Part shown: piece by piece, positions 17,715-42,362 of the stretch
Position numbering within the stretch: position 1 is the stretch's first letter
Layout of the letters: the number at the start of each line of letters is the position of its first letter
Assembly: GCF_006345805.1 (NCBI RefSeq)
Contig: NC_043012.1
Span: 13,454,001-13,518,000 of the forward strand
Length of the DNA: 64,000 nucleotides
Direction: 5' to 3'
From: Octopus sinensis
Lineage: Eukaryota
Notes under the pieces: model-generated
Seen by the model: only the letters and a program-made list of their open reading frames with translations
What the model was told of the DNA's origin: nothing
The model's database searches: none
Made by a program: the position numbers and the translations under genes

Positions 17715-17727
17715 TTATGGATCAATT
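17715..17727 (-). promoter_or_regulatory. Conserved upstream 13-mer TTATGGATCAATT (AATTGATCCATAA on the coding strand), CR-2 copy
   Basis: The identical 13-mer lies upstream of CR-3 (26218-26230) and CR-4 (42350-42362). This copy is 737 nt from the ATG. Confidence 0.6.
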
Positions 17728-18399
17728 TTCTCCATATGCAAAGCGACATCTAAGAGCTTGTGAATAATAGCAATTGAAAACAATACCATTACATTTGCTT
17801 CATTTAACTTTTAACTTTGTAGTTGTTATTGTTCTTCTTTTCAATTACACAGACCGTAACATGTCGGATGAAATACATTTTCTAGTTTTACTTAACAGTA
17901 TTAACTATATTTCATTTAATAGATACAGATAAACAGAATTTTGGTCATTTCCCAAGAGAACATTTTCTAGATTTCACGTAAAGTGGTTTTCCAGCCAATT
18001 TTCATATTCTTCTTTTCATTGTTTTGTAATTTATCTAGTGCTCGTATAATCACTGTGATTATTTTAATTTAAAATATTTCACATTCTCGCTCTTTGAATG
18101 TCTAAAACTTTATACATAAAAAAGGTTTTTCAATTTCTCTTAATGGCATTCCATTGGGGCTGGAGGGAGTATGACATATCAAATGTCTTGTGATTATTTG
18201 AATTTGCTTCAAGAAAAAAATATTTTTGGAAACATTTGTTACAATATATCGTGCATCTTGGATTGATTTGTCTGTCTATATGTATGATTGTTTATAGAAT
18301 AATTTAATATGCATCATTACTAGAAACTGTTTTTAAAATTCTGTAATACGCAAAAATATCTATTATATTCCTGGGCGTTGTGTGTGTTTATTGAGCGAA

Positions 18400-18570
18400 A
18401 ACACCTAAAAAAGCTCTACGAGGCTCCGGCAGGGGGTGGTGATCCCTGCTGTACTCATTCACCACAATGGCGGTGCCCCAGCATGGCCACAGCTCAAGAG
18501 CTGAAACTGGAAAAACAAACAAACAAAAAAAAATATAAAATCCGTTCTGTCTGTCTGTGTATGTGTCTTC
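18400..18570 (+). mobile_element. SINE 3' fragment
   Basis: GGCGGTGCCCCAGCATGGCCACAGCTC...TGAAACT tail shared with copies at 40410, 46940 and 54510. Confidence 0.55.
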
Positions 18571-19599
18571 TATGATCTCGGGCTTCCTGGATCTGATTGC
18601 GTTCAAATTTGATATGTAGATACCGACGGTATCAGGGCGTGTATATGTCTTGCAAAAATTACAAAATCGCTTCCAGGTGAGAATACGATCGATAAAGCCG
18701 TGGGAACGTGCATTTGTACGCGCAAGTACATCAGCTGTTGCGATCGATCCTACGCGTACGCGAGAAAAATGCACGTGTAGTTTCCTACATGTTTTATCGG
18801 ATAAACTTGTTATTGTCCCAGGTACGTTCTCATAAATTCATCATGCTTTTCCATCTAGATTTACATCCAGCTAACCCATTTGCATGCATCACTTTTGTTC
18901 TTTCGTCAACCTGTACATAACTGCACCTTCCATTTTTTGTTGTTTTTGTACTGCTTAAAGACACGTTTCTTACCTGCCAAACTTACTATTTAAAACATGT
19001 TTGTGTTCTCCCAGTTAACAGCCTTATCATTACTGGTACTTTAAACTCTGCAGTTGCATATTCGTATGAATAAAATCGTTTTTCTTTGGAATAGAAAACA
19101 AACCAGTTTTTATTTTGCTGCTGTCTCAAATTTAGGGTAAATCAGTGTTTCTCAAAGCGGAGATCTATCGGAGAGTCGGACAAGTTGTTTTGAGAAAATT
19201 TGGTTTAAATGTTTGACAACTCAGCACCGTCCATTGGACGTTTTGCTCATTCTTTATGAAATTCAAACTCATGTATATTTATATTTATCGGATCTCCGTA
19301 AAATAATCACTTGATTAGCTCATGTAAATACGCTTTAAGAACTGTAATACTATTGAATCTCATCCTTAGTAGTTATCTTGCTTGTTAAGAGATACCAAAT
19401 TTTCCCCAGACCAGCACAGTGACTTTTACTGAAATTGTTCTTAAATTCTTGGAAATTATTTTCTTTCTTTTACAAATTTTATATTGATCTCTGTTATCTT
19501 TACAGGACTAAGAGAAAAGTTTCAAATTACTGGACAATTATTTTGCGTACAACCTTTTCTTCATAAATTATCAATCAGATCTAAATTCATGAGGTTTAA

Positions 19600-19800
19600 C
19601 CGTTTTCATATATTTCCATTCGCTCATTTCTTCCATCAATTTGGTAGTAGAGACATTTCCTGACAAGTTAAACTTAATGCTACAAGACACCGAAAAATTA
19701 TTTTCTCATTATAAACTTCCTAACTGTGAAGAGCAAAAAGCTAGGACTTACCTGCTGATAGAAGAATATATTCGCACTTAAATAGAGATGCAATTTGAGA
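19600..19800 (+). mobile_element. Possible hAT-family transposase relic
   Basis: LVVETFPDKLNLMLQD resembles the YLxDIFxKLNxLNLxLQG motif, and a Charlie-like CAGTGTTTCTCAAA lies at about 19142. Very short match. Confidence 0.25.
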
Positions 19801-19949
19801 TATATTGCAAAAACCCTACGCTACCTTTTAGCCCTGTGTTAATATAACATCTTTATCAATTTCGGCAGTAAATAATACAGTACTATAAAAAAACAAAAAC
19901 AAATAACGCACAACAAATTGTTTTTAATAAGAAGAACGAGAGTTTATTC

Positions 19950-39435: not shown

Positions 39436-40324
39436 CTCTACGTTACATATGTACACAGACACACACAGACACACACACACCCATATATATGTATATATAT
39501 ATATATGTATATATATATATATGTATATATATATATATATATATTATATATATATATACACATATATATATATATATATATGTATGTATATGTCTGTGTG
39601 TGTAAACATCCATACATACATACACATGTATACTACTGTGTGTATGAAAACATATCAATAGTTTCATATTTACATATGGTGCAAATTATCAAAGATCCGA
39701 AATTAAAGACTGATTTAAGTCCATATTCCAAGGTGCAATGCGTCACTTCTTTTTGGTTGAATTAAATTTATTTCCTGGACTAAACTAGGTGAGATTTGGT
39801 TTCTAAATAAGCGAGAATTTGGTTTAGAATACTTGCACTAAACGTAATGCATTACCTCGATGTATTCTGGAAATTATCAAATCTCGTTTTGTATCAACGG
39901 AATATTCACTGAATATTCCAGTTACACTCTCAACAAAAGTTAACAAAATCCTCCGTTCAGTTGCAATTTTATGCGCAAGAACTATATCACAATATTACGA
40001 ATTTAAGGAGTCTAATGTTATATATGCATACATATACATATGTGTGTCTGTATATATATATGCATATGTAGGTATTTATATGCGTATACATGATATTATA
40101 TATATATATATAAATATACACACATATATATATATATATATATATATATATATATATATATATATATATATATATATCATATAACACATATAAAGATACT
40201 CATCATCTGTCTGTCTCTCACTTTCTTTTTCTTTCTCTTTCTCTTTATGAATATATATACATATATATACCTGCAAGCATATTTATCTACGTGTGTGTGT
40301 GTATATATATATAGATATAAATAT

Positions 40325-40450
40325 AGCGGTTCGGCATAAGCGACCGAGAAAATAAGTACCAGTGATACAAAGAATAAATCCACCGTTTGATTCCTTCGAG
40401 TAAAAGAGCGGTGCTCCAGCATGACCACAGTCAAACAATAAAAGAATAAA
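40325..40450 (+). mobile_element. SINE 3' portion
   Basis: GGTTCGGC...GACCG...AATAAGTAC...GCGGTGCTCCAGCATGACCACAGTC...AAAAGAATAAAAGA. Confidence 0.6.
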
Positions 40451-40593
40451 AGAATATATATACATATATATGTGTATATACATGTATTTATATATGTATA
40501 TATATATATATGTATATATATTTGTGTATATATATATATATATATATGTGTGTGTGTGTATACACACACACATATGTAAATTTATATGAATAT

Positions 40594-41688
40594 TTACATC
40601 AGTAAGCCAAAAATTATTATGAGTAGCAGAGACATAATAGTTACTGAGAAAAATATGTATTTTTTTCCACCACGAATCATACGTTTAAAAACATCAGCAA
40701 ATTTTCCTTGTGTATTTTCTTCATCTGGGCTTTCTCGGATACATGTTTTACGTTGTGAAGTGCTTGGTTCAGGACTGATTTTTGTTATTTTGACTTTATT
40801 GGTAGAAATTATCGAGGCAAAACATGAAAACCCACTGATGGTTGTCAGAAATAAGAGATACACTAGATATATAGAGAAAGTTCGAGAATTATTAGACATT
40901 AGTTGAGACGCTTCAGAAAGAAGAACAATATTTGAGAGAAATAGTGTAACTGCATATGAAACTTTCTCTCCGGATTCAGCAGGCAATAAATAGACAGCTA
41001 ATATCAGTATTGTCAACATTATTACGGGTATAACTTTTGTTACTGTTACTAATGTGATTTTTCTTTTCGCTCGAATTACTGCGGTAGCTGTGAATTTACT
41101 TTCTGTAGAATTTGAGAAAAGAAACTCCCATTCATGGAATTCATTTTGAGGCCCTAAGTCGTATGTACAGCTACTAATCACGGCTTCTGATCTTGTCTTC
41201 TCTTCCATGCAAATTTCTAAATGACACATGTGCGCATCAAAAGGATATTTCTCCATATTGATCTTGCAGTATGTATGGAAAATTTTCTCTGTGTATAAAA
41301 ACACGATTCCATCATGTCGTACAGTAACTTTTTTATCCTCATCAAATTTTGATTTTCCTGTTACACTGTTACATATCTGAATGATTGGATGCCAAATTGC
41401 GCTTGCTTTGATAGTTACCCTGCTTATATTACCCTTTAATGTTTTATTCCACGCAAGATTAATATCGTACCATTTTGCTCCAAAAACAAGATTACTTGTT
41501 AGTACACCTTTTGAAATATCTAATTCAATAATCTCCCTTATGTCCAGGGACACATTTATCTTTAAGTTGCCAAAATTGTCGTTCATATATGTCACAAGGT
41601 CAGCGTAATTTCTGAATTCATCATTAAACAAAGTATTGTTTGACAGAACTGTCTCCGTTAACATAAAAAAGATTATCAATTTCATCAT
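40594..41688 (-). CDS. Chemotactile-receptor-like Cys-loop channel subunit (CR-4), single coding exon, 364 aa
   Basis: Signal peptide, FRNY, WYDINLAW, IWHPIIQICN, Cys-loop CKINMEKYPFDAHMC and LPAESGEKVS. Loop C is shortened and lacks Cys. Confidence 0.95.
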   Translation of the reverse strand: MMKLIIFFMLTETVLSNNTLFNDEFRNYADLVTYMNDNFGNLKINVSLDIREIIELDISKGVLTSNLVFGAKWYDINLAWNKTLKGNISRVTIKASAIWHPIIQICNSVTGKSKFDEDKKVTVRHDGIVFLYTEKIFHTYCKINMEKYPFDAHMCHLEICMEEKTRSEAVISSCTYDLGPQNEFHEWEFLFSNSTESKFTATAVIRAKRKITLVTVTKVIPVIMLTILILAVYLLPAESGEKVSYAVTLFLSNIVLLSEASQLMSNNSRTFSIYLVYLLFLTTISGFSCFASIISTNKVKITKISPEPSTSQRKTCIRESPDEENTQGKFADVFKRMIRGGKKYIFFSVTIMSLLLIIIFGLLM

Positions 41689-42349
41689 CCAAAATTTGCT
41701 GGAGTCGTTCCCTTCACTCTACTCTTCTTGCTGATTTAGATAACAATTTAGAGGGATAAAATAATTTTTTGAGACAGACAGGTTAAATCTTCTTTTTCAC
41801 TGTAGACTTATAAATTTCGCACGCTCAAGGAATTGTAAAAATACTGAAGTAAATACACCAACGGTTTATTATACATATAACAGTGATTCCGTGAGTGTAT
41901 GAGGGAGCTTTTGTGTGTGTATGTGTGTTTGTGTGTGTGTGTGTGTGTGTGTGTGTGTGTGTGTGTGTGTGTGTGTGTGTGTGCACACACACACACACAC
42001 ACACGTGTGTGTGTTTGTGTGCAGTATGCTTGCGTGTGCGTATACATGCGTGTACATATATGTACATTAACTGGATGTTATTTAACAATTTGAATATCAG
42101 TAACTTTAGTTATTAGCCAGGTAATATTTACTGAACGCAGAACTGATTTCTGTCACTTGTTCCTAATTTCAATAATTTATGAGTAAATATTGCCTTCGGA
42201 TATTAATTACCACGAATTCACAATTTTTGTATTTTCATATTTGCAGATGTAATTTTCATGCATATAATATGATACACTGTTTCCTTTAAAAGAAAAATCA
42301 ATACGAGATCAATTAAGTAAGGCGTAATTGTAAATACAATCCTAATAGC

Positions 42350-42362
42350 TTATGGATCAATT
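42350..42362 (-). promoter_or_regulatory. Conserved upstream 13-mer TTATGGATCAATT, CR-4 copy
   Basis: Exact match, 662 nt from the ATG. A partial second site GAGATCAATT lies at about 42305. Confidence 0.6.

What the first reader, a model, noticed from the sequence alone, without database searches (positions are those of the whole stretch)
17715..42362. Identical 13-mer TTATGGATCAATT upstream of three receptors: candidate cluster-wide sensory-cell cis-element
Seen: exact copies at 17715, 26218 and 42350, in the same orientation and 737, 814 and 662 nt from the respective ATGs. The CR-4 flanks show no obvious other similarity and its protein is distant. A 10/13 copy (TTATGGATCA, 36644) lies upstream of the pseudogene, and only a weak TTGATCC core (2997) lies upstream of CR-1. 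I noticed no other full copy in the window. Established: ATCAAT/ATTGAT is the core of CUT-class homeodomain (Onecut/Cux) sites, and clustered chemoreceptor genes in other animals share short promoter motifs. Inference: a conserved transcription-factor site that coordinates or selects CR expression. I am not aware of this motif having been described.
Basis: partly seen in the sequence, partly recalled or inferred. Interest (0 to 1): 0.75.

Follow-up and report, generated by a model that had tools for sequence, protein, structure and literature searches.

The report
Shared upstream motif at octopus receptors
Three neighbouring octopus touch-taste receptor genes carry the same 13-base word about 0.7 kb upstream of their start codons; it is a reasonable but unproven candidate for a transcription-factor site, and it is not shared by the whole gene cluster.

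Summary
TTATGGATCAATT occurs exactly three times, and only at 17715, 26218 and 42350. All three lie antisense to the + strand, which is the sense strand of the genes. They sit 737, 814 and 662 nt upstream of three intact Cys-loop (chemotactile receptor, CR) ORFs of Octopus sinensis.

CR2 and CR3 share the word by descent: their upstream regions align over about 850 nt. The CR4 copy is an island with no flank homology, and CR4 does not group with CR2/CR3 in a tree. I estimate chance for that pattern at roughly 1e-3.

The motif is not a repeat and not cluster-wide. It is absent upstream of CR1, CR5, P0006 and P0012, and of two relatives in other species.

A shorter core, TGATCCATAAG, recurs:
- at an orphan site (36643);
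- inverted, 325 nt upstream of CR5;
- as a one-base-shorter variant at about -755 of P0008 and its two pseudogene copies.

O. bimaculoides keeps it 13/13 at CR2 and 12/13 at CR3. A more distant octopod keeps 10/13 at CR3, which is no better than background divergence.

Recurrent short words are common in this sequence. Only the link to gene starts is unusual.

Verdict: a plausible transcription-factor site for a sub-cluster. Its function and the factor that binds it are untested.

The parts
17715..17727 (-). Motif copy upstream of CR2. Gene-sense AATTGATCCATAA, starting at -749 from the ATG. Contains the core TGATCCATAAG (17714-17724).
   Evidence: Conserved 13/13 in the O. bimaculoides CR2 ortholog (L010 9264, -737).
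17705..17712 (-). Second AATTGATT site, 8 nt downstream of the CR2 motif. Together they form a homotypic pair.
   Evidence: Also present in O. bimaculoides CR2.
26218..26230 (-). Motif copy upstream of CR3. Gene-sense AATTGATCCATAA, starting at -826.
   Evidence: Orthologs read AATTGATCTATAA in O. bimaculoides (L011 4464) and GATTGATCAATAG in an unidentified octopod (L002 2148).
42350..42362 (-). Motif copy upstream of CR4. Gene-sense AATTGATCCATAA, starting at -674. It is an island with non-homologous flanks.
42296..42314 (-). Two further sense-strand WATTGATY sites, AATTGATC and TATTGATT, 41-66 nt downstream of the CR4 motif.
36643..36656 (-). Orphan copy CCTGATCCATAAGT. It shares a 12-mer with the CR2 copy. 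No gene is detectable downstream.
   Evidence: No pseudogene found.
36288..36298 (-). Orphan core ATTGATCTATA on the same strand, 345 nt from the other orphan. Weak collinear similarity to CR4 upstream.
   Evidence: The flank similarity is marginal (p about 0.04).
15854..16978 (-). CR2: intact intronless Cys-loop receptor ORF, 374 aa.
24262..25404 (-). CR3: intact ORF, 380 aa, 61% identical to CR2.
40594..41688 (-). CR4: intact ORF, 364 aa, 37-39% identical to CR2/CR3.
3554..4669 (+). CR1: intact ORF on the opposite strand. No motif or core within 1.5 kb upstream.
63562..64000 (-). CR5: 3' part only; the ATG lies beyond the window. No sense-strand copy upstream. An inverted TGATCCATAAG lies 325 nt upstream of its ATG, about 1.03 kb beyond the window end.

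Best explanation
The word is a short sequence-specific protein-binding site. Its core is TGATCCATAAG, extended to AATTGATCCATAA at three genes. It is kept in the sense orientation 0.66-0.83 kb upstream of the start codons of a sub-set of tandem chemotactile-receptor genes (CR2, CR3, CR4), with a one-base-shorter form at the P0008 group.

It lies either in the promoter of an unannotated short 5' exon or in a 5' intron or upstream enhancer. Its likely role is to contribute to the shared expression of these neighbours.

Shown: the copies, their positions and orientation, the non-homologous flanks, and the absence from the other cluster members.

Inferred: that a protein binds it, which protein, and any effect on transcription.

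The sequence fits two known site types loosely: the Onecut-type ATTGAT core and the Pbx-Hox-type TGATNNAT. It fits neither strictly.
For: - Three exact copies at matching distance and orientation.
- The CR4 copy has no flank homology. CR4 does not group with CR2/CR3: 5.5% bootstrap for a CR2/3/4 clade. So this is not simple descent.
- Only two 13-mer windows are intact between CR2 and CR3 upstream. The chance that one of them recurs in 1.5 kb upstream of another CR gene is about 1e-4 to 1e-3. This uses the 0.01 expected per 128 kb, plus my own arithmetic.
- In an unbiased enumeration over 7 non-homologous upstream groups, it is one of only two 13-mers or longer shared between groups in the -1000 to -500 window. 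TGATCCATAAG is the only 11-mer shared by three groups.
- TGATCCATAAG occurs 4 times in 124 kb against 0.107 expected, and 3 times against 0.08 expected in the window.
- A variant, ATTGATC-ATAAG, sits at -752 to -762 of P0008 and its two pseudogene copies.
- In the five-sequence CR2/CR3 alignment, the motif window is 10/13 invariant. That is the top 1.6% of windows and one of about 10 conserved blocks.
- There are homotypic ATTGAT clusters beside the CR4 and CR2 copies.
- It is conserved 13/13 and 12/13 in O. bimaculoides.
Against: - There are no expression, chromatin or binding data.
- Ortholog comparisons show no constraint above background. Species X CR3 has 3/13 changes at 78% background identity, with a 20-27 nt indel directly next to the site. 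The O. bimaculoides homolog of the P0008 site carries a 12-nt insertion inside it.
- It is absent from 4 of 8 O. sinensis CR genes examined. CR5 has only an inverted core at a different distance.
- Recurrent short words with non-homologous flanks are common here: 43 13-mers and 97 11-mers. Several of my extra copies were found post hoc.
- Family-wide 6- and 7-mer enrichment does not survive multiple testing.
- No other CR2/CR3 conserved block is found at CR4.
Confidence: 0.45

Rival explanations
1. Descent plus coincidence. CR2 and CR3 inherited the word in their duplicated upstream block. The CR4, orphan, CR5 and P0008-like matches are chance recurrences in an AT-rich, word-redundant genome. 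The word does nothing.
For: - CR2/CR3 upstream regions align over about 850 nt. By my arithmetic, one 14-nt exact run in an alignment at 59-65% identity is expected about 0.3-0.9 times.
- Divergence in CR3 orthologs looks neutral.
- Many equally surprising recurrent words exist.
- Another 13-mer, ATGGGAAATCTAA, is also shared between two gene groups in the same window.
- Under an iid model, about 0.5-1.5 three-group 11-mers are expected by chance (my arithmetic).
Against: - The joint event has probability about 1e-3 or lower. That event is a CR2/CR4 match falling on the one word intact in CR3, in the same orientation and within about 150 nt of the same distance from the ATG.
- A three-group 11-mer with 4 G/C bases has an expectation of about 0.01-0.03.
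- The variant at -752 to -762 of the P0008 group lies in the same positional window.
Confidence: 0.33
2. A relic of a sequence that moved or was copied. Examples are the end of an old mobile element, a duplication junction, or short-tract conversion between neighbouring paralogs. On this view the copies are similar because they are recent, not because they are selected.
For: - The copies are confined to a run of physically adjacent genes regardless of phylogeny.
- Within O. sinensis the three copies are identical, while CR3 orthologs differ at position 9: C in O. sinensis, T in O. bimaculoides, A in species X.
- Orphan copies lie in gene-less DNA next to retroelement ORFs.
Against: - There is no flank similarity at all among non-CR2/CR3 copies and no repeat-family matches.
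- Conversion needs flanking homology, which is absent.
- The copies are not arranged as terminal inverted repeats.
- The CR2 copy is already present in O. bimaculoides, so it is not recent.
Confidence: 0.12
3. An RNA-level signal in the 5' UTR or 5' intron of the pre-mRNA, such as a binding site for a splicing or stability factor. This would explain the constant sense orientation.
For: - Copies at CR2, CR3, CR4 and the P0008 group are all on the gene-sense strand.
- The NCBI model XP_029646610.1 places the CR3 copy inside a 5' intron. That intron is spliced to an acceptor at about -86, which lies in a conserved block.
Against: - That model's upstream exon is transposon-derived and may be spurious.
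- The CR5 copy is inverted.
- Orphan copies have no gene.
- There are no transcript data.
- Splice-donor-like GT next to the motif is not conserved (my reading).
Confidence: 0.1

Closest known systems
Conserved sequence element (CSE) upstream of each clustered protocadherin variable exon. It is bound by CTCF and used in promoter choice. (From my own knowledge.)
   Same: A short, nearly identical word at a roughly fixed distance and orientation upstream of several members of a tandem array, embedded in otherwise divergent promoters.
   Different: The CSE is about 22 bp, lies about 0.2 kb upstream, is present at nearly all alternate exons, and has a proven binder. Here the word is 11-13 bp, lies about 0.7 kb upstream, is found at only a sub-set of genes, and has no binder or function shown.
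Shared promoter motifs of chemoreceptor families. Examples are homeodomain (Lhx2) and O/E (Ebf) sites of vertebrate odorant-receptor promoters and enhancers, upstream motifs of Drosophila Or genes, and E-box or X-box motifs of C. elegans chemoreceptors. (From my own knowledge.)
   Same: Clustered, fast-evolving, intronless receptor genes with short shared upstream words thought to direct sensory-neuron expression.
   Different: Those motifs are degenerate, family-wide, near the transcription start and experimentally validated. This one is near-exact, restricted to neighbouring genes, and has an unknown relation to the transcription start.
Onecut/HNF6 CUT-homeodomain site (ATCAAT/ATTGAT; PMC1976457).
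   Same: The ATTGAT core is present in the CR2, CR3, CR4, P0008 and 36288 copies. Extra ATTGAT(T/C) sites are clustered beside the CR4 and CR2 copies.
   Different: The copies at 36643 and upstream of CR5 lack ATTGAT. The most conserved part, TGATCCATAAG, extends away from the CUT core. The 8-mer WATTGATY is not enriched in the window: 23 found against 32.6 expected.
Pbx-Hox bipartite site TGATNNAT(KR) (PMC3261376).
   Same: TGATCCAT, TGATCTAT and TGATCAAT in all copies except the P0008 variant fit TGATNNAT.
   Different: Position 5 is C, where T, A or G is usual. Position 9 is A, not G/T. The P0008 variant (TGATCATA) breaks the pattern.

Membership tests
   The exact 13-mer is found at 3 of 8 O. 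sinensis genes. With up to 2 mismatches in the sense orientation there is nothing at CR1, CR5, P0008, P0006 or P0012, nor at O. bimaculoides CR5 or O. vulgaris P0014. Relaxed variants add only the P0008 group and an inverted core at CR5.
   All four exact 13-mer copies in about 219 kb lie at -674 to -826 of CR2/3/4-type genes. However, only CR-cluster sequence was available, so there is no comparison with other genes.
Dispersed repeat / transposon fragment | Copies share flanking sequence, or match many other places | tested here: not met
   Flank z-scores are about 0 for all pairs except CR2-CR3. BLAST of 800-nt contexts finds only self and orthologs. This was tested on about 220 kb only, not the whole genome.
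Passive paralogy | Flanks conserved as well as the word | tested here: inconclusive
   Met for CR2-CR3: 59-65% identity over about 850 nt and downstream-flank z = 8.4. Not met for CR4, the orphans, CR5 or P0008.
Phylogenetic footprint (site under purifying selection) | Conserved above background in orthologs | tested here: inconclusive
   O. bimaculoides keeps 13/13 and 12/13 at about 88% background identity. Species X keeps 10/13 at 78% background. The window ranks in the top 1.6% of the five-way alignment. The CR4 ortholog could not be reached.
Onecut/CUT-class homeodomain site | ATCAAT/ATTGAT (or ATCGAT) core | tested here: inconclusive
   Present in 5 copy lineages and absent in 2. The consensus is from PMC1976457.
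Onecut/CUT-class homeodomain site | Bound by an octopus Onecut/Cux protein | not testable with these tools
   Needs EMSA, CUT&Tag or DAP-seq.
Pbx-Hox composite site | TGATNNAT with T/A/G at positions 5-6 and K, R at positions 9-10 | tested here: not met
   The loose TGATNNAT pattern is met in most copies. Position 5 is always C and position 9 is A. The consensus is from PMC3261376.
Chemotactile receptor (CR) gene family: the genes, not the motif | Intronless Cys-loop receptor ORFs in tandem arrays, related to annotated octopus nAChR-like genes | tested here: met
   Pfam Neur_chan_LBD and Neur_chan_memb matches. Homologs are annotated in O. sinensis, O. bimaculoides and O. vulgaris. Single ORFs. 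The review states CRs are intronless. Which named CR each gene corresponds to was not determined.

The most novel reading that the evidence does not exclude
TGATCCATAAG / AATTGATCCATAA is the recognition site of a factor that co-regulates, or chooses among, a block of adjacent chemotactile-receptor genes. On this reading the orphan pair at 36.3-36.6 kb acts as a stand-alone enhancer for the CR2-CR4 sub-cluster. It would be the first cis-regulatory code described for cephalopod sensory receptors.
Probability: 0.2. Interest if true: 0.75.

Novelty: new member of a known kind. Interest (0 to 1): 0.45.

Why it matters
How octopus sucker cells decide which of about 26 chemotactile receptors to express is unknown. 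I found no cis-regulatory element for this family in the held literature.

A verified shared site would give three things:
- an entry point for finding the transcription factor;
- a basis for building sensory-cell reporters in cephalopods;
- a test of whether tandem receptor arrays in molluscs use promoter-tag logic like vertebrate protocadherins or odorant receptors.

If it is only coincidence, the case is a useful caution. In this AT-rich, word-redundant genome, exact 13-mers recur often enough that shuffle-based expectations overstate significance.

Tried and rejected
- Repeat or transposon origin: rejected on flank comparisons.
- Small ORF starting at the ATG inside the + strand word: the ORFs are 16-26 codons with no conservation, and the ATG is lost in O. 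bimaculoides CR3 (my reading).
- Splice donor next to the motif: the GT is not conserved in species X or CR4.
- CR pseudogene near 35-36 kb: not found by tblastn, a family HMM or ORF listing.
- Family-wide ATTGAT enrichment: rank 49, p = 0.06. WATTGATY is not enriched in the window.
- O. bimaculoides CR4 locus: XP_014789393.1 is not on record, so this decisive comparison could not be made.
- Identity of species X (SRA runs SRR11869384/85/90/91): not found in the literature.
- The van Giesen 2020 paper is not held.
- All three were rerun.
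Full report
**Where the window comes from**

The window is Octopus sinensis chromosome CM016874.1, about 13,454,001-13,518,000. I inferred this from the overlap with locus L007.

It holds four intact single-ORF Cys-loop receptor genes and the 3' part of a fifth:
- CR1, 3554-4669 (+)
- CR2, 15854-16978 (-)
- CR3, 24262-25404 (-)
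- CR4, 40594-41688 (-)
- CR5, 63562 to beyond 64000 (-)

All of them match Pfam Neur_chan_LBD. Their relatives are the octopus nAChR-like genes. The literature calls these chemotactile receptors. It describes them as intronless and expanded to about 26 in O. bimaculoides (PMC11526382).

**Checking the observation**

TTATGGATCAATT occurs exactly three times, at 17715, 26218 and 42350, all on the + strand. In gene orientation it reads AATTGATCCATAA. It starts 749, 826 and 674 nt before the ATGs of CR2, CR3 and CR4.

Among all 13-mers shared exactly by the CR2, CR3 and CR4 loci, two lie in coding sequence. This is the only non-coding one.

The copy at 36644 is real.

I could not find the pseudogene it was said to precede.

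**Is it passive paralogy or a repeat?**

CR2 and CR3 (61% amino-acid identity) have upstream regions that align over about 850 nt at 59-65% identity. The motif sits about 100 nt inside that block. For this pair the word is inherited. It is the longest exact run outside a microsatellite. By my arithmetic, though, one such run is expected about 0.3-0.9 times at that identity.

CR4 is different:
- Its protein is 37-39% identical to CR2/CR3.
- In a neighbour-joining tree it does not group with them. Bootstrap support for a CR2/3/4 clade is 5.5%.
- The 150-200 nt on either side of its motif show no similarity to the CR2/CR3 flanks.
- None of the other CR2/CR3 conserved blocks is present at CR4.

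The 800-nt contexts of the copies match nothing else in about 220 kb of octopus sequence. I found no evidence of a dispersed repeat at this scale.

**Related loci**

I retrieved these loci through protein look-ups:
- the rest of the O. sinensis cluster (L007, L008, L009);
- O. bimaculoides CR5, CR2, CR3 and the P0008 ortholog (L005, L010, L011, L012);
- an O. vulgaris relative (L006);
- CR2 and CR3 orthologs from an unidentified octopod in SRA runs SRR118693xx ('species X'; L001-L004).

What the orthologs show:
- O. bimaculoides CR2 keeps the 13-mer exactly, at -737.
- O. bimaculoides CR3 has AATTGATCTATAA at -795.
- Species X CR3 has GATTGATCAATAG at -796, next to a 20-27 nt indel.

The invariant part in the CR2/CR3 lineage is therefore ATTGATCNATA. 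In the five-sequence alignment, the motif window is 10/13 invariant. That places it in the top 1.6% of windows and makes it one of about ten conserved blocks. However, 3 changes in 13 positions in species X is what the 78% background identity predicts. Ortholog data therefore give no evidence of constraint above background.

**Not cluster-wide**

The 13-mer was searched with up to 2 mismatches in the sense orientation. It is absent from 1.4-10 kb upstream of:
- CR1, CR5, P0008, P0006 and P0012 in O. sinensis;
- O. bimaculoides CR5;
- O. vulgaris P0014.

Unbiased 6- and 7-mer enrichment over seven non-homologous upstream groups puts pieces of the motif near the top. CATAAG occurs in 6 of 7 groups. 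Nothing survives correction for more than 1,000 tests, and ATTGAT ranks 49th.

**Further relatives of the word**

Relaxing the search gave these:
- The 11-mer TGATCCATAAG occurs at CR2, at CR4 and at the orphan site 36643. It also occurs inverted, 325 nt upstream of the CR5 ATG, about 1 kb beyond the window. That is four occurrences against 0.107 expected in 124 kb. O. bimaculoides CR5 keeps TGATCCATA.
- TTATTGATC-ATAAGT, one base shorter, lies at -762, -752 and -754 of P0008 and two recently duplicated pseudogene copies. The O. bimaculoides homolog has a 12-nt insertion after ATTGATC.
- ATTGATCTATA lies at 36288, on the same strand as the orphan at 36643. It has marginal collinear similarity to CR4 upstream.
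- CR4 has three WATTGATY sites within 67 nt and CR2 has two within 23 nt. The 8-mer is not enriched in the window overall.

**How surprising is it?**

The shuffle expectation of 0.01 answers the wrong question. In 124 kb of O. sinensis sequence:
- 43 non-periodic 13-mers have three or more occurrences with non-homologous flanks, and this one ranks 14th;
- 97 11-mers have four or more such occurrences, and TGATCCATAAG ranks 4th.

Word recurrence is therefore ordinary here. What is unusual is the placement. Only two 13-mer windows are intact between CR2 and CR3 upstream. The chance that one of them recurs in the sense orientation within 1.5 kb upstream of another CR gene is about 1e-4 to 1e-3. 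It is lower still given the similar distance from the ATG.

In a full enumeration, the motif is one of only two words of 13 nt or more shared between non-homologous groups in the -1000 to -500 window. TGATCCATAAG is the only 11-mer shared by three groups. A three-group 11-mer with four G/C bases has a chance expectation of about 0.01-0.03 (my arithmetic).

The extra copies were found post hoc. I count them as supportive, not decisive.

**Mechanism**

The best reading is a protein-binding site that serves a sub-cluster of neighbouring genes. I give it a confidence of 0.45.

Its position relative to transcription is unknown. The NCBI model XP_029646610.1 for CR3 splices a transposon-derived exon at 31355-31501 to an acceptor at about -86. 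That acceptor lies in the conserved block TTAATTCAGAAATC. This model would place the motif in a 5' intron. The model may be spurious.

Alternatively, a conserved TTTTAT(A) stretch lies about 60 nt downstream of the motif, and donor-like GTAAGT or GTAAGA sites lie further on in CR3. These could mark a short non-coding first exon, which would make the motif promoter-proximal. That is my reading and is untested.

The factor is open:
- ATTGAT is the Onecut/HNF6 core (PMC1976457). The homotypic clusters at CR4 and CR2 favour this reading. The copies at 36643 and CR5 lack ATTGAT.
- TGATNNAT is the Pbx-Hox consensus (PMC3261376). The C at position 5 and the A at position 9 are atypical.
- A Six-type TGATMC reading rests on my memory only.

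**Rivals**

- Descent plus coincidence: confidence 0.33.
- A moved or converted relic: 0.12.
- An RNA-level signal: 0.10.

**Novelty**

The held literature does not describe a cis-motif for these receptors. In kind, it resembles shared promoter words of other clustered receptor families and the protocadherin CSE.

I rate it a new member of a known kind and of moderate interest. It could not be settled here because the CR4 ortholog, whole-genome counts and functional data were out of reach.

Noticed in passing
window 17592-17601 and 26103-26112 (-); 17049-17062 and 25475-25488 (-): The CR2/CR3 upstream regions share other blocks that are invariant across three species. These are TTGTAGTCTC about 120 nt downstream of the motif, TTAATTYAGAAATC at -84, and ATTTACCT at -21. 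In CR3 the -84 block holds the splice acceptor used by the NCBI model. They are candidate promoter or splice elements and are absent at CR4.
   Followed up: partly
L007 25621-25634 and L005 9693-9706; also P0008, its pseudogene copies and P0006 at about -256: The CR5/P0008/P0006 clade has its own conserved upstream block, AAGGTATTTC(CAAT), at -256 to -295. It lies inside a 48-nt stretch that is identical between O. sinensis and O. bimaculoides CR5 and contains a CCAAT box. The two clades may use different proximal elements.
   Followed up: partly
L007 about 630-640 versus L007 about 24960-24970: At homologous upstream positions, P0008 reads TTTCATCAATACAC and CR5 reads TTTCATTGATTCAC. A CA-to-TG change turns ATCAAT into its reverse complement, ATTGAT.
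   Followed up: no
window 31355-31501 (-) and 25345-25488 (-): The NCBI model XP_029646610.1 (456 aa) extends CR3 by 76 residues. It does this through an upstream exon that looks transposon-derived and by reading through the 5' leader. This is probably a mis-annotation.
   Followed up: partly
L007 10001-27064: The annotated CR5 protein (P0011) is a chimera. It joins the start of a pseudogene copy about 16 kb upstream to the 3' part of the real CR5. An intact single ORF starts at L007 25916.
   Followed up: partly
L007 1-12700: P0008 and its 1.1 kb upstream region are triplicated at 89-92% identity. Two of the three copies are truncated or frameshifted pseudogenes.
   Followed up: partly
window about 17270-17380, 25700-25800 and 42000-42100 (-): A microsatellite lies about 300-400 nt upstream of each of CR2, CR3 and CR4. 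It is (GA)n in CR2/CR3, conserved in O. bimaculoides and species X, and (CA)n in CR4.
   Followed up: no
window 7451-7850: A tandem repeat of a 52-nt unit, about 8 copies.
   Followed up: no
window 614-1594 (-) and 33365-33762 (+): Retroelement remnants. One is an ORF with a zf-RVT match. The other is a set of reverse-transcriptase-like fragments between CR3 and the orphan motif copies.
   Followed up: no
L011 (LGKD02038026.1) and L010 3-914: In the O. bimaculoides assembly, the CR3 ortholog sits on an unplaced 10-kb contig. The DNA upstream of CR2 on the chromosome instead carries a frameshifted CR-like relic. This suggests an assembly gap or a rearrangement.
   Followed up: no
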